A stretch of DNA of 63,636 nt, the filler included, from Sluysia triapertura (Eukaryota): NCBI GenBank assembly GCA_046118255.1. It is 5 parts of 5 records of this genome, joined end to end, with 100 filler letters (N's around TTAATTAATTAA, not from the genome) between each part and the next. Parts side by side here need not be neighbours in the genome. Positions count along the whole stretch, not along the records: positions 28,033 to 39,672 come from JBJNIA010182535.1; 4 more parts are not named here. One strand, 5' to 3'. The position numbers and the translations under genes were made by a program. The notes under the pieces are model-generated. The model did not search any database, was not told where the DNA came from, and was given only the letters and a program-made list of their open reading frames with translations. Shown here piece by piece: positions 28,033 through 39,672 of this stretch. Positions within the stretch are counted from its first letter, which is position 1, and each line of letters starts with the position of its first letter.

Positions 28033-28221
28033 TTTAATAATGTTCCACTGACACTGCAGTCCTAAGTTTTGACCCTTCTATCAACCCTCATTCTTTACTA
28101 ATCCCAACAAGTGTAAAATATTTTGAAATAAAAAATTATAAAATTAGTTTCAATTTAATTTAATTTAATTTGCATAATTGTCGATATAATTTAATATTTG
28201 TTATATTAGATTTCATAAAAT

Positions 28222-28288
28222 GGACTGAATCGAATACGGGACCTCTCGTTTCGCAGTTCGATGCTTTATCACTGATCTATCAGCCCCG
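28222..28288 (-). repeat. tRNA-derived sequence (SINE head or tRNA pseudogene)
   Basis: Minus strand cggggctgatagatcagtgataaagcatcgaactgcgaaacgagaggtcccgtattcgattcagtcc carries degenerate Pol III A-box and B-box. A second, partial copy is at 56108-56127. Confidence 0.7.
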
Positions 28289-28395
28289 TTTAATAATTTT
28301 ATTTTATTATAGTCAATTTTACCAAATGGCACTTTTATTATTGTTATAATTATCGTTATTATTATTTTATTTTATTAATATTATTATATTATTAA

Positions 28396-28396
<1 letters not shown>

Positions 28397-28444
<48 letters not shown>
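28397..28444. repeat. (TTA)n microsatellite
   Basis: Seen directly. Confidence 0.95.
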
Positions 28445-28446
<2 letters not shown>

Positions 28447-28549
28447 AAATTGAGTTTCATTGTTTGTTTCACAATTACGAATTTCATCATTATTTCATTA
28501 TTAAGTAAATAATTTCGCAAAATTTTTCAAAACATCATTAGATACTAAT

Positions 28550-29460
28550 TTATATTCGTCTGTGTCTTGTTATTTTCGCAATAGCTTCTTTATTAGATAT
28601 GTGATTTGTCATTTGTTGAGTATTTGTGTTAAAACTTGTACGAATTTCTGTTTCATTCATTATATTTGTTTCACTTGATAACTTTTTAGTTAACGATTCT
28701 ATAAAATTTTCATAATCATGAATCGTATTATGTTTCAATAATAGGTTTAATATCTTTTGTTTGTGTAGCTGTTATTTGTAAAATTTCACTGGCCTAATTT
28801 TCTTCTACAGAATTCTGTAATATGTCATTATTATCTTCAATTTGAACCAGAGTGCTATCAGATCAGTTGCATTTAAATCATTAGTAACTAGTGGTTCAGA
28901 TGTATCTTTGAGTTCAAACTCAGAACATCCATCAAAGTTCATCATTATCTGAATTGTTTAATTTCGATGTTAAGGTAACTTTAGGAATATCCTCGCACCA
29001 AACTAATCTTTTATCGGATCCGAAAGATACCAAACTTCCATTACTTTGTAATATAATTGAATTTTCTTTGATTATATATTTTGGTGTTTGATTCTTTAAG
29101 GATATTATTTGTGCAAAAGATTCATTTGAATGTCTCGTTAATGTAGGAAGACAATTAATTAAAGATTTGTCATTTGATTCTGATTGGATGATTTAATTGG
29201 TGAAAAATAGATTGGAATAATGTAGAAGGTGATTTCAAGGATTGCAAAGATAATGAAGGTGTTGATCTTGATCTTGAAGATCGATTTTAGTTAAATCTCG
29301 TTTAAATCACGAAGGTATTTCGGAAGATATGCGAGAATGATAGAATAAATCAAAATTTTTAATATTCATGCCAGCGTTCTGAGTTGCAAATTCTTTACAT
29401 TGTTTATTATTCACTGCGTCAAAAAAATGTCGTTGAATCAAGAGAATCATTGGATAAATG
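28550..29460 (-). pseudogene. Degenerate coding unit C behind a G-free leader; family membership uncertain
   Basis: Leader begins tggtgaccaag (~29620). Fragments LFYHSRIS, RSSRSRSTPS and LNHPIRIK weakly resemble LFYDVRIS and KCHPIRIQ of copy D. Ends in ORF 28550..28738. Confidence 0.3.
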
Positions 29461-30098
29461 TTTTTGTATTAAGAGTAGAAATTTCATTTTTTAATTAAAT
29501 TTTGAATTTTTTTAAACTGAAAAAGATTTTACGTTATTGAGATTTAATATTTTAAGTTATTTTGTTGTTATGTGGTTGTGTAGAAATTTTTGTGATAAAA
29601 TTTTGTGTAATAAGCTTGGTCACCAGAGTTAAGTTAAATATTTCTTAACTTTTCTTCCTTATGTTATGATCATATCACAACCCTTTAAAATCATTTAAAA
29701 GTCGTTATATTCGAAAAATGAAAACATGTTTTCTAAAAAATTAATTTATTTTCCACAAAAGAAAACATTTTCTAAAATTGAAAAAGAATTCTAGAATTCT
29801 ATTCGTTTTGGATTGGCTGTTGGTTAATATGTATAACTGCAGCTGAAACATAAAGACAGTTAATTTTCACGCAATTAAATTTTTCTGTTTTTGGTTTTGA
29901 AATTCGGACACATTATATTCCCTTGGATTAAAGAGCTACATCCTACTCGTATTCACTTGCGCGTCAGATCAACTCAATTTTATTGAAAAAACTCTACTTT
30001 TCTATAACTTTTGGTACGTTTTTTCCTGAAAGGTAATTTTAATTCTAGTAGTTAAACTTATAAAATCGATTCAAAATGAATTTTGTAACATTCCCGAT

Positions 30099-30118
30099 TG
30101 TGTGTGTGTGTGTGTGTG
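30099..30118. repeat. (TG)n microsatellite
   Basis: Seen directly. Confidence 0.9.
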
Positions 30119-30540
30119 TAATAGAGTGCACTATTGTGATTTGATTCCTGGTGGTAATGTTTTGGTTATAAATTATAATTTTGGTTATAATTTATATAAG
30201 AAAATCTTTTTGAACGAACTACTACGTTTCATCCATGCGATTATCCGTGAATACAAAATTATCCAAATAAATAAATAATTATTCCGAATAAAATATCACA
30301 AATTTTAAATGTGTTATAGCTTTTTGATTTGTTCTGTTTTTGTTATTATTAGTGTGTGAATTTTGTCGAGCTTATATACTATTTTCTTAAATGATTTCCT
30401 TTTTATTCAATGTTTACAATTAATTTAATTTTTTCATAAAATAAATAATTCATTTATGAAACAAATAAATAATTAATTTCCGGTTTAAGATTTTAAATAA
30501 TTTGTTTATTAATTAAATCATAAGTAATGAATTAATAGTA

Positions 30541-30710
30541 CACATTTCCCTCGTTTTACTATGTTAAAGAAAAATTTAAAATTAAATATTGAAAATAAAC
30601 TGCCATGATGATCAAAAGGAATAAATTTTCAATATTTAATTTAAAATTTTTTTTGAACCCCGTAAAATCGAAAATGTAAAATGTACTGTGTAAAACGAGG
30701 TATAGTGGTG
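30541..30710. mobile_element. 170-bp fold-back MITE
   Basis: TA-flanked. Outer arms cctcgttttac / gtaaaacgagg, inner arms aattaaatattgaaaat / attttcaatatttaatt. Confidence 0.72.
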
Positions 30711-32636
30711 TACATGTGAATAGTATATATCTCTTAAAAATATTTGCTAATCGCTTTCTAAGTCAAATATTACAATTGAAATTTCTGTTCCAATTGATAA
30801 TTAGTAATTTAAAAATATCACCCACTCAAATTTTCAATTCTGTTGTCGCATAGCAATAATACATTTGTAATTATTTTCTTTTCTTGCTGTAAAATTTTGT
30901 GATTTTTAGTGACAAATATTACTTCGTATCGTATTTTTCACTGTTACCACAAAAATGGCAAATAATATTTCGAATTTCACTTAGTGTTTCTATAATTCTT
31001 CGTTTCCTATAGTTAATTTTGTTTCATTCTAGAATAAAATATATTTATATAATCTTATTTTCATTTCTTCTTTATAGCACTTAATTAACACTGGCCACAT
31101 TATTTATTTAAACCCGCCTTTCGTTATTTTGTGCTTATTTTTCATTTCCATTTTTCTAAAATCGAATGTTTTTCTTTCTTATAGGGTTGTAGTGCTTTCG
31201 TTTAATCCATAGTTTATTCTTTCTAATTAAGTATGATGCGTTTTACTTCCTGTTCTTATTCTATTTTTGTTTTGTGTTTTCTTTTAGAAAATGATGCATT
31301 TTCGAGTTTTATAAATCTTATTGTAATACTTATAATAATACTTATTATTTATATAGCGCTAAAATTTACTTCTAAATTTGTATGAAAAATTAAACAGAAT
31401 TTGAGTAAGCATAAAATAAACTTAAAATGATTAATTAAAAATAACGAATGTGTCAATGCATAAGTTAATTTCAAATATAAATAATTCTGGTTTATTTGTT
31501 GTTTAATTTAATTAAAATAAAAATAAGAAATCAAATACTGCATATTTATAAAATAAAATAAATTTGATTTAGAATATAATTTTGATATAAATTTGGTAAT
31601 GGAATAAACTGTGAATCTGATTATTGATAAATGTCGCATATCAGTTAAATTATTGTTGTCAAAATTAAATTGATACAAGCGAGTTTCTCAAAAATGCTGC
31701 TGTTGATTCTATGTTTATAGAGATTAGCACTACAAATATTTGCTTTTATAAATCAAACCAATCAAACTAGTTTATAATTAATCATGCGGTGCTTAGTTCT
31801 CAAGAGATGGAATTACGAATCTAATTGAAATTAAAATCCTAGATTTCTACATTCAGAAAGTAAATTTATTACAAAAAAATTAATGAGATAATACAATTAT
31901 AATTAATAAAATAATCTCATTAAATTTTGTTAGGTTAACTTTGTTATATTCGTTATTAATAATTATCTACACCGAAATCTACCTAAATTTTATTGAGACT
32001 AATGCAAGTATGTGTTCTTTTTGGCAAACATCTTTTATTTTGTGCTTTTTGTTGTATTTAATTTATCCTGAACTTTAAATTTTTAACAAAGAGAAAATCT
32101 GAATCTAGTACCTGCCATTAAAAATGCATTAATTGACATCTTTTTGATGTAATAAAAATGGGATACAAATACCAAAAAACCAGTATATTTTACAAAAATA
32201 TGTATGATATTTATGATATTAACATAAAATTCTGAAAAAATTCGATTTATGTAATGTAACAAGTCTAATGTACTTCTTTCTTTTGTTTAGCACAATTTAA
32301 AATGTCAAATAATATTAAGATTTACAAAATAATCTCAAGAGTAATAAAGTTAAATAAGAAGAGTATTGTGTTTTAGAATGATGATTTATAGATTTGCTGT
32401 GGTTTTTCTAATTATTGAAATGTATTTCTAAACCGTAATACAATTTATGACTTTGTGGTTAACGAAAACATTAAATATAATGTAATAAATTTTAATGTAA
32501 ATGTAAAATATTTTTGTTTCTTTTAAATCTTTAAAAATCTATGCGTTATTTATTTACCTTTATTTTAAACTTTTGTCAATATGTCTGAATGCTATTTTAT
32601 ACTTTATAAATCTTATATGTACTTGTGAAATTCTTG

Positions 32637-33100
32637 TGTAGTGGCCAACCCCATAATTTAAGCTTAAATATAACTCCACTAAAACAATTTTAATCACAAT
32701 CATACTATGTAGCTATTATCACCACACAATTCACCGCATAAAACAACAATACACAATTATAACACTTTTCCAACTCACATCCACCAACGAAATAATCTCT
32801 ATCTCAAACATTCCCAACTCAATAAACTCTTACATTCATTTCAAACAACTCAAAACACTCACTCATTAAATACCTTACCAAACAATTCACAACCATAACA
32901 TAAACCTCATAAATCATAAACACAATAATATTCAAACCATACTAATAACCATTTTAGAAACAATACCATTCTACCTAAAATTTCAAGCAACAACAACAAG
33001 CTAATTCCACGTCACACAACCATACTCACCATTCATAACCAATTGCAAAAACATATTAGCACGTAAAAAATTATTTCGCAACAATCACTAAAAATCAAAT
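32637..33100 (+). promoter_or_regulatory. G-depleted leader of copy D (putative promoter/5' UTR)
   Basis: Starts tgtagtggccaacc (copy A has tgtggtggccaacc on the minus strand at ~9065-9078). No G from 32790 to 32956. Confidence 0.45.
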
Positions 33101-33199
33101 GTAGAAGACTTTAAAGAATTTATTAGATCTCCTTATCTTTTCCACTATTTCCTTTCATTTCATTTCGCATCTTATGTTCATTTTTTTTGTCATTATATA

Positions 33200-33850
33200 T
33201 CTCAGAATATAAAGATTCGAAAGAAGCAGCTCGTGTAAAAAGACATAAAGATTTATGCGTTAATTTTATTCATCATTGTTATTATTCTTATTATCACTTT
33301 TCATAATAATTTTATTATTATTATTATTCTTACTATTACTATTTTAATATTATTAGTATATATTTAATTTTATCATTTTAATATTATTATCACTCTTATT
33401 ATTATTAATTACATTAGTATTATTCTTATTATTATGCACTATTACTATTTACAGTTATTTAACTATTACATAATAATCTTGCAGTATTGAGTCACACTCT
33501 TGATGTAATAATTAATTTTATCACCAATCCCTCTACCAAATGTCACCCAATCAGAATACAGTACTACAAATATCAATCATCTACTTTTCAACGATCTGAT
33601 TGGGTGCACAAAGTCAGACAGCCATCTTATGACGTCATTATACATAGAATTTCAAAGACAGACATTAATTATTGGCAAATAATTTCCTAGTTGATGAAAA
33701 CAAAAAAGTACGCCAGCCATTTTTTAAAAGCACAAATTTTATGTTCAACATTCTCAATAATTTCTCGAGCTAAATTTTAAAACTTGCAGTTTAATCAGCT
33801 ATTTTTACAATTACGTTCATACCAGTCAGAATTTAGAAAACTGACAATTT
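33200..33850 (+). pseudogene. Disrupted 5' part of copy D
   Basis: KEAARVKRHKDLCV, a hydrophobic low-complexity stretch and QYYKYQSSTFQRSDWVHKV (ORF 33487..33690) match copies A, B and F. Confidence 0.55.
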
Positions 33851-33851
33851 C

Positions 33852-35558
33852 ATGTCAAGATTGGTTATCATTAGTTTGTTGATGGACTCTCAACATATAC
33901 CAAATACAAATCATTTATTTTATGATGTTCGAATTTCAGATATTAGACACAATTTTAGTGTATCCAAAACCGATACTATTGTACGGTATGTTAATCAGCA
34001 GTTCACTTCCAATGCAAGACATAATGGCGTATATGTTTTTAACCCGTTTATTGTAGATGAATCTCTGAATTTAAGTGCACTAAATACATCGTCGGTCGTA
34101 CAATTTAGATCAACCTATTCATTTGATGACAAAATAGTAAGTCACTATAAAGTAGATGCTAAAATTAATGACACGATCATTATAACCAACGTTACAAGTA
34201 GTCGAGACGATTTTATTTCTATTCGTTCTGATCAGTCGACTGACCCAAAGAAACAAAAATCAATATTACAACAGTTATTCCCAATTATTCATGCGCATGA
34301 AGATCTAATATTTCAGGTATGTAAAGCCAATCCTACTATCCATTTAGAGTCATGTATCCATCGTATATTCAATGAAATTTACTCATACCATGATTATTTG
34401 ATAAAAAAGGAACTTAGCTATTTTAAAGATTATATGTTCAATAAAGTTTATCCAGATTTTTATGTTTTAGTCAAAAAGGAACTCAGTAGATGTAAGGAAC
34501 AACATTATAGACATACAACTTTTATATTTGATGTTACCTATATAAATGTTAGTAAATCGATTAAGAAACAACGTCACAGATATTACATGTCAGATGCAAT
34601 GTATTTAAATATTAGTAACCAGATCAAAGAACGATTCTATAGATCCACTCTAAAATTGATTGAAGAAAATCTAAATTGTACACGTCATTTGGTCCTAATA
34701 TTCGATCACTTTCAGAATAATAGAGGTAATACTTTCACCTTAAATTTTATTTGTTCTGTTTATTGTAACAATTGTCTTTATATTATTTATTACAGATTAA
34801 CCTACCTGGTGAGCGATGAAAATGGAACGTGGTATGAGGTCAAGCTTGCAGGAAACTTCTCGAAGTCCAACATCTTTTACAATAAATCATCTTTATTAGG
34901 AATTTTAATAAATTATCAATTTGTGTATTTTTGTATAATTTTTCTTTACAATGTAAAATTAAAAAATAATTATAACAACTTCTCGCTACTTCTTTTTTTT
35001 AAAATCAAACTTGCAGATAAAGTGTTTACGAACATTAATGACATTGTGGAGGTCGATGTTAGAGTAAATTTCAACGATTCTGTTCTAAAAATAAAATGTA
35101 AATTGACGATAATATTTCTAATAAATTCAAAAAATATAAATTCAATGTTATCCGAAAATAATATGAGTAAATTTATAACTAGCCATAACATCACCAGACC
35201 TTCTAACTTTAAATATTTAAAAAACCACAAACAATCTTGTAAGAATAACATTGACCACAAAGGTAAACACGATGTTAAGTTCACTGTGTCTTTAGAGGGT
35301 TATCTAATTCACAAGTGTCATACTTCCGTTCATAAGATACTATTATGTGTTAACAACAAAACTGAATATAAACCCTCAAAAATTAGAATTAAGTTTTATC
35401 TCTTTTCATTCTCTATATTAACGCCCTCAAAGCCATCATATATCATACAACATACTTCAACTTACAACAACAAACCATTAACATCTTTAACATACCCCTC
35501 CATATATATGAGGTGGACTGATCCCTCAGATAATTTGCAATTAAGTGTAAGATATTAA
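33852..35558 (+). CDS. 568-aa uncharacterised protein, longest open member of the repeated family (copy D)
   Basis: 1.7-kb stop-free frame in very AT-rich DNA. Shares motifs with decayed copies elsewhere in the window. No recognisable known domain. Confidence 0.7.
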   Translation: MSRLVIISLLMDSQHIPNTNHLFYDVRISDIRHNFSVSKTDTIVRYVNQQFTSNARHNGVYVFNPFIVDESLNLSALNTSSVVQFRSTYSFDDKIVSHYKVDAKINDTIIITNVTSSRDDFISIRSDQSTDPKKQKSILQQLFPIIHAHEDLIFQVCKANPTIHLESCIHRIFNEIYSYHDYLIKKELSYFKDYMFNKVYPDFYVLVKKELSRCKEQHYRHTTFIFDVTYINVSKSIKKQRHRYYMSDAMYLNISNQIKERFYRSTLKLIEENLNCTRHLVLIFDHFQNNRGNTFTLNFICSVYCNNCLYIIYYRLTYLVSDENGTWYEVKLAGNFSKSNIFYNKSSLLGILINYQFVYFCIIFLYNVKLKNNYNNFSLLLFFKIKLADKVFTNINDIVEVDVRVNFNDSVLKIKCKLTIIFLINSKNINSMLSENNMSKFITSHNITRPSNFKYLKNHKQSCKNNIDHKGKHDVKFTVSLEGYLIHKCHTSVHKILLCVNNKTEYKPSKIRIKFYLFSFSILTPSKPSYIIQHTSTYNNKPLTSLTYPSIYMRWTDPSDNLQLSVRY

Positions 35559-36479
35559 AAAACACTAGCAATTATTATACTAGATTTATTTTTAATACCA
35601 ATAACAATGATTTTATTTCTGAAATATTTCAAAGATTTTAAATACCTTATTTATTCATAAGTATGGTTATATAAGTATAAACTTTCTATAGAGTAATACA
35701 ATCTACTTAAACTACTATTTTTTACGGTTAGTCATTAAGGCCAATCACAAAATCAACTTAAAATCTCAAATCTTTAGTTGGTCCTTAAGGTCAATTATAA
35801 AATCACAGGACAGAGTCTTCGGCTAGGTCCTTATTACAACTTAAATACTATTCATATTATAATTTTATTGTTTTTTGTATTATTAATTATTATTTATTCA
35901 TTTTATTAAATTAACGTTAATTATGTTTTATTTTTGTGTAATAAAAAGAAAATATATTAAAAGGATTTTTCAGATTTTATGAAATCTAAGCTGAATTCAT
36001 AATAAATTTGAGTCACAAAATAATTTTCATCTAGCATCAAGATTACGTCAATTTTAACATTACTTTTTATTGAATTTTAACGAACGCGATATCGAAGTTT
36101 AGAAATTTAATAATTAGTACGTTTTCATACTATCGTTATTTACTTAATTTTAACTTAAATATTTACCATATTAGCGTTGGTCTTACTTAGTTTTTTGAGT
36201 TATCTGTTGTAAAAAACGACGAATTTTGTCTATTATTGTTAAGATAAGGCGAAGCATCTTTTTGTACGATTAATTTGGATAATTGCTTTCAGATAATTTT
36301 ACAGGTACGCCATTAGTAAGTCGTATACTGTAAACGGACTCATAATAATTAATTATTTTGCTGTAGGTTAGGTTTTTAGATTATGAAAAACACCAGCAAT
36401 TGTTATTATGCGTCAACGAGAATTTCAATATTGCTCACGTATTTTAATATGTATCATCATGGAACCAAAATGTATGCTC

Positions 36480-38901
36480 TCAAGGAAACCACAGATACAA
36501 ATATAAAATCTGTCACATGATCGAAGATTACGAGTTATATATTTTGGAATTCGTTATTTGTCAATGATAATAGTTTTATTTTACATGTTGAGAAAAATGC
36601 ATTCATTTCAAGGTTTATATTATCACTTGTTACTCACTATTTATAACATTATTCGATTATTAAGAGTAAATTATTTTTGTAGTTTTTTTAGAAATAGTTT
36701 ATTAAAATATTTTCCATTATCATAATGAGAATTAAATTACCACTATGCATTTAGACAAAGTATTATTTACATTAGATCTTGTCAAATACGCCATTTATTT
36801 AGAATTTATTTAATGAAATTTATTTATTTTTAGTCGTTTATTGTTTTCTAACTCCTTGAAATTTGCCGACACTCAGCAAAACCGAGATTAGCGGAGTGTT
36901 ATCATAAGGATATAACTAAAAAGAAATTTATGTAAATGTAACGAATAACGAATAATGCTCATTTTCATGTGTATTTTAATTCTAAAATGATTTTAAAATC
37001 ATTAAAAAAAATTTAAAGTGAGATTACAAAGAGATTATATAAATTCAAAATTTAGTAACAAATGACGATCACTTTTAAATTGAAATTGGAGAAATAATTA
37101 TTTTAAATGAGATTGTATTAAAATTTACAAACATTAAACCTTACTATCACAATCAATAAAATCATAAGAATTAATAAAAATAATATAGTATAAATTTTGC
37201 ACATATTTTCCAATAGTAATTTTGTGTATTCTCTAGAATACTGTACAATTTATATTAATACGATTCAATTACTGTTCATTATACAATTTTATATTAAATC
37301 TTTTTATAATAATACGATTCAATAACAAAGGACAATTATACAAAAATTCATAGTGACAAATTCTGTATTATAAGTATAGAGACCCAATTCAATAATCAAA
37401 GAGATATTGATTGTTACCTGGAGAAAATTTCGTTCATTGAAGGCAGACTTAATAAACATCTTGTCAATCTGAATTCTGTCAAAGATTTCAGTAAGTTTAT
37501 TAATCGTCGCTTCAATATAAAAAGTCACTGTAAATTAATAGAAGTTTTCCTTAATATTAAAATCGCATTATTATAAAATAAATTTATATCTAAATTAACA
37601 AAATTATATCATTGATTAATATTATTGATTATTTATTATCATTGTTCACATGTTTAATTATAAATATAACCTTTTTTAATTTTATTTTTATTAACAGTTA
37701 GAAGAGAGGGAATGAAGGTAGAGCAACATAGTAAAGTTGAACCAAAATTAAAATTTTTATACAACGAAATTCTTATAATAAAGTTAAAATATAACCAAAT
37801 AACGGCAAAGTTTAAACATAAAACTCATAATCGTTGTAAAATTAAATTGTTTAGTACTTCCATCTTGAACAGCTGAGACGAGTAGTATTTGAATTCATAC
37901 CTTCAGATAAAGTAAATCTATGAGTAAAGTAAATTTTTCACTTATTCAACATTTATTTGCAAACATTTTTTAAAATAAATATCATGTTAATTTATCTAGG
38001 AATATCGAATAGTAACTACTGGTCATAGTTTGGGAGCTGGTGTTGGGATACTTTTATCGTGCTTATTGAAAACCGACTATCCTTCTATAACGTGCTATGC
38101 GTTTGGACCACCTTTGGCAACTGTAAAGTTTGTGTTTTATATACTGATTATTCATTTTTGAATTATAAACATTTAATCCAATTTTCATATTTACAGAATT
38201 GGCAAAAAAGTTCATAACAAATTTAAATAGTAATCTCCTAAATGATAAGCACACCAGTGTTAATGTAGTTTTTTGTTAAAAAACTTTGTTATTTTTAAAA
38301 TATATTATTGTTTCAGCAAAATTTTATTATTTTTATTAAAAACAAAAAGGAAGGACTTAAGGTCCTTTAAAAAACATATCATTGAACTGAAAAACAAACA
38401 AGAATAATTAATTCCATTTATTAAACAATTAGTATAAACAAAAACACCAAAAAATTTGTTATGAAAATCAAAACTAGATAAAATTTGTAACTTTATAAAA
38501 TTATTAAAACCTGGAACAAAGTAGTATTTCCAACTAAAACCTTGATCGCAAGAAGTGATTGCATTTCCGTAAGCAAAATAAAATTCTCGTAAATCCACGG
38601 CATTTTGAATTAAACATAAAACACAAAGATTAGCTCGAGTAAAACTGTAGTGAGATTCTTGATTTTTTTGAACTAGTTTAGCTGCCTTCCTTTCCTTCAG
38701 CTTCGCTTTTAGTGTAGCATAACTTAAAGACAATTTATTTGGAAAATCATCATCGCACAAAATCCCGTTTTTTTGAATATTTAAAATAAAAGTAACCTCA
38801 TTTACATTATCTAAATTATTTTTAGCATTTACTTGTTCAAAGTCTACAACGCGTACATTGACGTTTTTGTCTGACTTATTCTTGGCTCTACTTTGTAACA
38901 T
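36480..38901 (-). pseudogene. Unidentified repeated-family copy F (ORFs 38305..38901, 38063..38254, 37319..37528)
   Basis: KERKAAKL..ANLCV, QYIKHKLYSCQRW, IYFTHRFTLSE, YIEATINKL and LVIFDH (36517-36534; LVLIFDH in copy D) occur in the same order as in D. G-poor leader at ~39200-39660. Confidence 0.62.
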
Positions 38902-39672
38902 TCATATTTTTCTTAAAAGTTCATGTGAACTTTTTGGAAACATAAAAATATTTCTTCTGAAACGCTTTCTGTGAACTTTTTTAGTTTTAAAGGATTTAGT
39001 TTTATGAATTACCTTTAAATTTTAATATTAAAACAAAAATTAAAAAGGATAAAATATTTATGAAATTTCTTTTAAACTTTCTTTGTATTTAAATTTTGTT
39101 TTAGTTATTTTATTTAAGTATTCCTTTAGTTTTTATAGGTTCCGTGGATCTTTCAGAAATACTACAATGTTTCGTGCTACATGACAAATGTATAGTACAA
39201 CTAAAACAATAAAAATGATAATCACAGTAATACAGCAACAATGTGACCCGTGGTGGTGTTATGGAACGATACTGTAAAAAAAGTATTGGATCACATTAAA
39301 TCAAAAAAGAAAACGTATTTGGTTATTATGATTTTAGGGTGATTATATTAATTTTGTTGTAGAATTTTATGGTTCGAAGTTTTAATGCTTTGTAGTTATG
39401 TTAAAAGTGGTAAATTAATAATGTGTGAGCTGAATTAGGCGTATGACGATGTATTAGTAATAGAAATTTTTGTTGGAGTTTGCGTATAATTTACTGTGAA
39501 GTTTCAAATATATATTGACCGTATGTGAATGTTTTAAAATGTGTGAAAAGTATCAAAATGTTTTGTTTGTGAATCGTGTATAGGTTTCTGTTTGGAACAA
39601 GATCGTCGCATGTTTGTTGCATAACTTGGTGTCTGACTAATTGTGTGAGCTTTGCCCAAAGATTAAGCTATA

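What the first reader, a model, noticed from the sequence alone, without database searches (positions are those of the whole stretch)
33852..35558. 568-codon orphan ORF: the only long open copy
A 1.7-kb open frame is very unlikely by chance at this AT content. Its upstream family-homologous part (33200-33850) is disrupted. It is therefore either the youngest pseudogene of the array or a 5'-truncated copy kept by selection. It lacks the CCCH finger found in A and E, which suggests modular variation among copies.
Basis: partly seen in the sequence, partly recalled or inferred. Interest (0 to 1): 0.7.

Follow-up and report, generated by a model that had tools for sequence, protein, structure and literature searches.

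The report
Long orphan gene, function unknown
A 568-codon open reading frame in very AT-rich DNA of an intron-bearing eukaryote is far too long to be chance and has no detectable relative in any database searched. It is most likely a lineage-restricted protein-coding gene, and its function and expression could not be tested here.

Summary
The ORF is real. ATG 33852 to TAA 35558, + strand, 568 codons. It is the longest open run in the piece by far: 573 codons against 198 for the next and at most 177 in simulations. P of staying open by chance is about 1e-27.

It is an orphan. There were no hits in Pfam, PHROGs, NCBIfam, PDB sequences, the word search, an exhaustive phmmer run over 1.84 billion representative proteins, or viral and metagenome contigs. 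A single-sequence AlphaFold model was useless (pLDDT 32).

The piece comes from an intron-bearing eukaryote. It holds a class-3 lipase exon at 38000-38128, has 21-31% GC and shows no CpG depletion.

No second copy, array, LTR, TIR or zinc finger is present in the piece. The "family-homologous" upstream part matches only (TTA)n low-complexity DNA.

An in-frame 69-nt tandem duplication inside the ORF has diverged to 64% identity while the frame stayed open. A neutral ORF of this size would probably be broken after about 1-2% divergence, so this lineage was kept open by selection for a long time.

Beyond being open, coding signatures are weak, especially in the 3' half. N-glycosylation sequons are twice the expected number, and the N-terminus looks like a signal peptide.

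Best reading: a fast-evolving, taxon-restricted gene, possibly for a secreted or membrane glycoprotein. A young mobile-element ORF or a freshly dead copy is not excluded. The tools for expression and for paralogues were closed.

The parts
33852..35558 (+). 568-codon ORF (ATG to TAA), an orphan with no detectable homologue
   Evidence: open, P about 1e-27; no relatives
33834..33836 (+). In-frame TAG, 5 codons upstream of the ATG; it bounds the open frame on the 5' side
33480..33851 (+). GC-richer (about 27-38%) upstream region with promoter-like motifs; the function is inferred only
33544..33606 (.). Perfect 12-nt inverted repeat, each arm holding a CCAAT/ATTGG box (33544-33555 and 33595-33606)
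33630..33637 (.). TGACGTCA palindrome (CRE-like), the only one in the piece
33852..33884 (+). N-terminal M-S-R followed by an 8-residue hydrophobic core; signal-peptide-like by eye, no predictor was run
34362..34499 (+). In-frame tandem duplication of 69 nt (23 codons), the two units 64% identical
   Evidence: 38/54 matches against a maximum of 36 in 300 codon shuffles; best offset exactly 69
34726..35016 (+). Candidate in-frame intron or 'exitron' (GTAAT...CTTGCAG, 291 nt = 97 codons, no stop). It holds the only TM-like hydrophobic segment (residues 346-368). Untested.
   Evidence: read
33234..33450 (.).

Best explanation
The ORF is an intact, lineage-restricted ('orphan') protein-coding gene of an AT-rich, intron-bearing eukaryote. 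It probably has one large coding exon of 1.7 kb and its own promoter about 100-370 nt upstream of the ATG. Its sequence evolves fast and is strongly shaped by AT mutation pressure, so little coding signal remains apart from the open frame. Selection against stops and frameshifts has nevertheless kept it open for a long time. The product is most likely a secretory-pathway protein, either a secreted or a membrane N-glycoprotein. Shown: the ORF, its improbability by chance, the absence of relatives, and the old in-frame duplication. Inferred: the promoter, the secretory nature, expression, and present-day selection.
For: The frame is open for 573 codons against a simulated maximum of 177; P is about 1e-27. 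The in-frame 69-nt tandem duplication is statistically real and has diverged to 64% identity. Divergence of that size would break a neutral 1.7-kb ORF with near certainty, since P(no nonsense) is 0.009 at 5% divergence. The frame was therefore protected for most of that time. The 5' half shows three-base periodicity (chi2 29.4, p 5e-5), and G1, T3 and GC3 deviate in the coding direction even after conditioning on the absence of stops (z about 2). There are 16 N-x-S/T sequons against 8.3 expected (shuffle P 0.004), and only 2 and 6 in the other two frames. The N-terminus has R plus an 8-residue hydrophobic core, and there are 12 Cys. A promoter-like cluster lies directly upstream: paired inverted CCAAT boxes and the piece's only TGACGTCA. 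The GC-richer island 33480-35560 stands out from flanks of about 21% GC. No transposon hallmarks were found.
Against: Once the absence of stops is allowed for, the 3' half (34728-35555) has no significant coding signature, and its amino-acid make-up is close to a random translation of AT-rich DNA (G 1.2%, A 1.4%). The protein-language-model 'recognition' value was low (1582) and the best feature hits only reached 0.84-0.86. The AlphaFold2 single-sequence model had pLDDT 31.8. No orthologue or paralogue was available, so no dN/dS could be computed. The duplication argument shows past selection in the lineage, not that this copy is still alive. Promoter motifs in a single sequence are weak evidence.
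Confidence: 0.5

Rival explanations
1. The ORF belongs to a lineage-specific mobile or dispersed repeated element, for example an ORF1/gag-like or env-like accessory ORF. It is open simply because this copy is young; older copies elsewhere in the genome would be decayed.
For: An intronless 1.7-kb ORF sits in an intron-bearing genome, 2.4 kb upstream of and on the same strand as a lipase exon. TTA-rich low-complexity DNA lies on both sides of the 33480-35830 unit, as if the unit had inserted into a microsatellite. A second orphan ORF of 198 aa lies nearby on the other strand. Orphan-like accessory ORFs are common in transposons (general knowledge). The duplication argument fits equally well, because selection would act on the element family.
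Against: There is no reverse transcriptase, integrase, transposase, protease, helicase or zinc-knuckle signal in Pfam or in an exhaustive phmmer search. No LTRs, TIRs or poly(A) tail flank it. The only flanking direct repeat, a 10-mer at 33487 and 36008, is of a kind expected dozens of times by chance in 11.6 kb (and my estimate). No second copy is in the piece.
Confidence: 0.27
2. It is a recently dead copy: a pseudogene or relic that lost function under about 1-2% divergence ago and has not yet collected a stop.
For: Coding signal is weak once openness is allowed for, especially in the 3' half. The amino-acid composition is extremely AT-driven. There is no annotated or predicted protein matching it in a collection of about 15 billion predicted proteins. 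Survival of the open frame at up to 1% divergence is not improbable.
Against: It needs a functional parent gene or family, and none was found in any database. The start codon, the full-length frame and an intact promoter-like region are all present. Catching a 568-codon ORF inside that narrow time window is unlikely a priori.
Confidence: 0.13
3. Only part of the ORF is coding. It would be a multi-exon gene whose true mRNA removes 34726-35016 or other segments, and the long frame is the unspliced read-through.
For: A good GT donor at 34726 and a pyrimidine-rich CAG acceptor ending at 35016 define a 291-nt segment that is exactly in frame. That segment holds the most intron-like, hydrophobic and low-complexity codons. 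Coding signal is stronger in 33852-34725.
Against: The segment has no stop in 97 codons, which is about 2e-5 by chance at 0.104 stops per codon (my arithmetic). So it too has been kept open. The alternative short intron 34726-34795 would run straight into TAA. GT/AG pairs abound in AT-rich DNA and a third of them are in frame. This reading refines the gene model and does not offer a different nature for the ORF.
Confidence: 0.1

Closest known systems
Taxonomically restricted (orphan) genes of eukaryotes
   Same: It is an intact ORF with start and stop, has no detectable homologue in very large protein collections, sits in ordinary nuclear DNA next to a conserved gene fragment, and has a fast-evolving, composition-driven sequence.
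   Different: As far as I know (general knowledge), orphans and de novo genes are usually short, around 100-200 aa. This one is 568 aa and carries an old internal duplication, so it is more likely an old gene that has diverged beyond recognition, or of mobile or viral origin, than a de novo gene. Expression was not shown.
Accessory ORFs of retroelements (LINE ORF1/gag; env-like ORFs of invertebrate LTR elements)
   Same: It is intronless and orphan-like in sequence. The glycoprotein-like features (sequon excess, hydrophobic N-terminus) resemble env-like ORFs.
   Different: There is no adjacent pol/RT, no LTR, no zinc knuckle, no R-x-K/R-R cleavage motif and no C-terminal membrane anchor. The only hydrophobic segment is central, at residues 346-368.
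Exitrons (protein-coding, in-frame, stop-free introns inside exons)
   Same: 34726-35016 has canonical GT...AG ends, a length divisible by three and no stop codon, and it lies inside a larger coding exon.
   Different: It is predicted purely from one sequence. There is no RNA evidence, and such site pairs are frequent by chance in AT-rich DNA.
Nested or neighbouring genes near a class-3 lipase gene (Pfam PF01764)
   Same: A bona fide Lipase_3 nucleophile-elbow exon (G-H-S-L-G) lies 2.4 kb downstream on the same strand.
   Different: The ORF shares no similarity with lipases. No other lipase exon was recognised in the piece, so it is open whether the ORF lies in an intron of that gene or upstream of it.

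Membership tests
Taxonomically restricted (orphan) protein-coding gene | Intact ORF much longer than chance allows | tested here: met
   573 open codons against a simulated maximum of 177; P about 1e-27
Taxonomically restricted (orphan) protein-coding gene | No homologue outside the lineage | tested here: met
   0 hits in Pfam, PHROGs, NCBIfam, PDB, the word search, phmmer over 1.84e9 representatives, and viral and metagenome contigs. Caveat: how well these collections cover the source lineage is unknown.
Taxonomically restricted (orphan) protein-coding gene | Transcribed and translated | not testable with these tools
Taxonomically restricted (orphan) protein-coding gene | Purifying selection on the frame | tested here: inconclusive
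   The old in-frame duplication (64% identity) within a still-open frame argues for past selection. No orthologue or paralogue was available for dN/dS.
Transposable-element ORF | Recognisable element protein domain (RT, integrase, transposase, gag knuckle) | tested here: not met
Transposable-element ORF | Terminal repeats (LTR/TIR), poly(A) tail, target-site duplication | tested here: not met
   Only low-complexity matches were found. The 10-mer direct repeat at 33487/36008 is within chance expectation.
Transposable-element ORF | Multiple copies in the genome | not testable with these tools
   Only this piece is available and there is no second copy in it.
   No motif in the ORF and no Pfam hit
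Retroviral-type envelope glycoprotein | Signal peptide, basic cleavage site, fusion peptide, C-terminal membrane anchor, position downstream of pol | tested here: not met
   The N-terminus is signal-like and sequons are enriched. There is no R-x-K/R-R site, no C-terminal anchor and no pol upstream.
Pseudogene of a known gene | Homology to a parent gene plus disabling lesions | tested here: not met
   No parent was found and there is no lesion in 568 codons

The most novel reading that the evidence does not exclude
A long and evolutionarily old gene on which the only lasting constraint is that the frame stays open. Examples would be a protein whose function needs length, glycosylation or bulk composition and not a specific fold, or a locus where the act of translation matters and the product does not. 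An in-frame, stop-free optional intron (34726-35016) would add or remove a membrane-spanning segment, switching the product between membrane-bound and secreted forms.
Probability: 0.08. Interest if true: 0.6.

Novelty: new member of a known kind. Interest (0 to 1): 0.3.

Why it matters
If it is expressed, this would be an unusually long (568 aa) taxon-restricted protein with no relative among about 15 billion predicted proteins. It would also carry internal evidence, a diverged in-frame duplication, that the frame has been protected for a long time. Such cases help separate 'old gene diverged beyond recognition' from 'de novo gene'. In an AT-rich parasite or symbiont, such genes are often the lineage-specific surface or secreted proteins. 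If it turns out to be a young transposon ORF or a freshly dead copy, it is ordinary.

Tried and rejected
**Chance ORF.** Rejected.

**Alternative genetic code.** A ciliate-type code is rejected, because the frame lacks TAA, TAG and TGA alike and all Gln codons are CAA/CAG.

**Bacterial, phage or plasmid contaminant.** Rejected on the spliced-looking Lipase_3 exon and the lack of any PHROGs or NCBIfam hit.

**LTR or TIR element.** No terminal repeats.

**The 10-mer TTGAGTCACA at 33487 and 36008 as a target-site duplication.** Rejected. About 65 exact 10-mer pairs are expected by chance in 11.6 kb, and no poly(A) precedes the right copy.

**Short intron 34726-34795 (70 nt).** Splicing it would run straight into TAA, so it cannot explain the open 3' half (read).

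**ESM Atlas leads to phage Ig_J/fn3 domains.** Scores were 0.84-0.86 with about 120 shared features, which is within the range of shuffled sequences, so I did not pursue them.

**AlphaFold2 single-sequence model.** pLDDT was 31.8, so no fold search was run.

**A by-eye 'second lipase exon' at 30030-30275, and further lipase exons at 38169-38276 and 39105-39209.** No Pfam support.

**Ancient 69-nt array over the whole ORF.** Only two units are similar.

**Tools unavailable.**
- The search of earlier findings was not open.

**Joined spliced model.** A joined model (33852-34725 plus 35017-35555) was not searched or folded. The parts 33852-34727 and 34797-35555 were searched separately by reference.

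Full report
**What is there.** The ORF listing gives one ORF at 33852..35558 on the + strand: ATG start, 568 aa, TAA stop. The frame is open from 33837, just after an in-frame TAG at 33834.
- In the piece 28033-39672 only three ORFs reach 80 aa. The next longest open runs are 198 codons (38308-38901, - strand) and 109 codons.
- The piece has 21-31% GC, and the ORF region 27-31%.
- The other two sense frames of the ORF carry 0.104 stops per codon. P(568 open) is therefore about 9e-28, and about 2.5e-14 for the last 277 codons alone.
- In 300 Markov-1 simulations of 11.6 kb built from the ORF's own composition, the longest open run averaged 100 codons and never passed 177.

**What kind of DNA this is.** 38000-38128 (+) encodes a 43-residue stretch with the G-H-S-L-G nucleophile elbow.
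- It matches Pfam Lipase_3 above the curated cut-off (E 1e-8).
- It matches solved feruloyl esterase A and mono- or diacylglycerol lipases (E 4e-4 to 1e-2).
- It is flanked by an AG acceptor and a GTAAAG donor (read).
- The piece is therefore nuclear DNA of an intron-bearing eukaryote.
- CpG is not depleted (observed/expected 1.06).
- No tRNA or Rfam family is present.
- I could not identify the organism.

**Orphan status.** The ORF product has no hit anywhere:
- Pfam at E up to 1, for the whole protein and for the two parts 33852-34727 and 34797-35555.
- PHROGs and NCBIfam, and PDB sequences at E up to 10.
- The word-indexed search of 5.8 billion clusters.
- An exhaustive phmmer run against 1.84 billion representatives of about 15 billion predicted proteins: 0 at E up to 1e-3.
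- Relatives encoded in viral or metagenome contigs.
- The ESM Atlas gave only weak leads (0.84-0.86, low 'recognition') of the kind that shuffled sequences also obtain.
- AlphaFold2 without an alignment gave pLDDT 31.8, so no fold search was justified.

**No family in this piece.**
- tblastn of the protein against the piece finds only itself.
- There are no LTRs, TIRs or poly(A) tail around the ORF.
- There is no CCCH, CCHC or C2H2 motif in the product.

**Is the frame protected?** 283 of the 5112 possible single substitutions (5.5%) would create a stop.
- Under neutrality the frame survives with P 0.39 at 1% divergence, 0.15 at 2% and 0.009 at 5%. The figures are lower once frameshifting indels are counted, under my assumed indel rate.
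- So the ORF is either very young as a neutral sequence or under selection.

An internal clock helps decide between these.
- 34362-34430 and 34431-34499 are a tandem, in-frame duplication of 69 nt (23 codons).
- It is the best self-match at any offset (38 of 54 matches). It beats all 300 codon shuffles, which had mean 31.6 and maximum 36.
- The two units are now only 64% identical, with differences of 10, 5 and 10 at codon positions 1, 2 and 3.
- That much divergence after the duplication, with the whole frame still open, means the lineage leading to this ORF was kept open by selection for a long time.
- This speaks against a de novo or accidental ORF. It does not prove that this copy is alive today.

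**How coding-like is it otherwise?**
- The 5' half (33852-34725) shows three-base periodicity (chi2 29.4, p 5e-5). The 3' half is weaker (p 0.014).
- I compared the ORF with random codon strings of the same base composition that merely lack stops. Only the 5' half keeps modest signals (G1 z 2.1, T3 z 2.4, GC3 z -2.0). The 3' half has none.
- The protein is dominated by I, S, N, L, K, F and Y, with G 1.2% and A 1.4%. That is close to what AT-rich DNA gives when translated.
- So the sequence is only weakly constrained, or it evolves fast.

**Hints on the product.**
- There are 16 N-x-S/T sequons where 8.3 are expected from the composition (shuffle P 0.004). The two other frames have 2 and 6.
- The N-terminus has Arg followed by an 8-residue hydrophobic core.
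- There are 12 Cys and one TM-like segment at residues 346-368.
- Together these suggest a secretory-pathway glycoprotein. This is an inference; no predictor was available.

**Gene model.**
- A GC-richer island runs from about 33480 to 35560.
- Upstream of the ATG lie a perfect 12-nt inverted repeat holding two CCAAT boxes (33544-33555 and 33595-33606) and the only TGACGTCA of the piece (33630). An A/T-rich TATA-like stretch sits near 33725. These look like a promoter, but they are unproven.
- Inside the ORF, a good donor at 34726 and an acceptor ending at 35016 define a 291-nt in-frame, stop-free segment that contains the TM-like stretch. It could be an optional intron ('exitron').
- The shorter candidate 34726-34795 would hit TAA at once (read).
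- Such site pairs are common by chance in AT-rich DNA.
- I did not search or fold a joined, spliced product; the parts were searched separately by reference.

**Verdict.**
- Most likely (about 0.5): a real, fast-evolving, taxon-restricted gene, possibly for a secreted or membrane glycoprotein.
- Less likely (about 0.27): a young ORF of a lineage-specific mobile or dispersed element. No element hallmarks were found, but copy number could not be tested.
- Less likely (about 0.13): a freshly dead copy.
- A refinement (about 0.1): only part of the frame is coding in the mature mRNA.
- Orphan genes are a known kind, so this is a new member of that kind. It is notable mainly for its length and for the internal evidence that the frame is old.

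Noticed in passing
window 32733-33032 (wider: 32640-33060), + strand: A 300-nt tract with only 6 G but 88 C (A 45%, C 29%, T 24%; GC skew -0.685). It is not periodic and matches nothing else in the piece. It lies about 800 nt upstream of the ORF. The ORF's own 3' end (35352-35558) is also G-poor. Unexplained.
   Followed up: partly
window 38000-38128, + strand: A lone class-3 lipase exon with the GHSLG nucleophile elbow (Pfam Lipase_3 E 1e-8; PDB feruloyl esterase A and diacylglycerol lipases), flanked by AG and GTAAAG. No other lipase exon was recognised. The most obvious next exon, at about 38190, is out of phase with the GTAAAG donor, so the gene may be degenerate or spliced differently.
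   Followed up: partly
window 38305-38901, - strand: A second orphan ORF of 198 aa, longer than any open run in 300 simulations (maximum 177). It has no Pfam hit and no word-search relative, only a weak PHROGs hit of unknown function (E 7e-4). It lies just downstream of the lipase exon on the opposite strand.
   Followed up: partly
window 33544-33637: A perfect 12-nt inverted repeat carrying two CCAAT boxes, followed 24 nt later by the piece's only TGACGTCA. This is a promoter-like cluster 215-310 nt upstream of the ORF's ATG.
   Followed up: partly
window 28335-28445 and 33266-33435: (TTA)n microsatellite arrays of 38 and about 57 units. They explain the apparent 'homology' between the region upstream of the ORF and other places in the piece.
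   Followed up: yes
window 30554-30667: A hairpin with 43-nt arms (86% complementary, 28-nt loop) in AT-rich DNA, possibly a small foldback or MITE-like element.
   Followed up: no
window 28550-29450, - strand: Several protein-like open segments, for example 28935-29192 (86 codons, with a WD-repeat-like G-S-D-K-R-L-V-W stretch). They suggest exons of an unrecognised gene on the minus strand. No Pfam hit.
   Followed up: partly
window 35737-35830: A small GC-richer patch 180-270 nt downstream of the stop codon, with a roughly 21-nt direct repeat (35737-35757 and 35786-35806) and three GGTCCTTA motifs. It could be a 3'-UTR or element-end feature.
   Followed up: no
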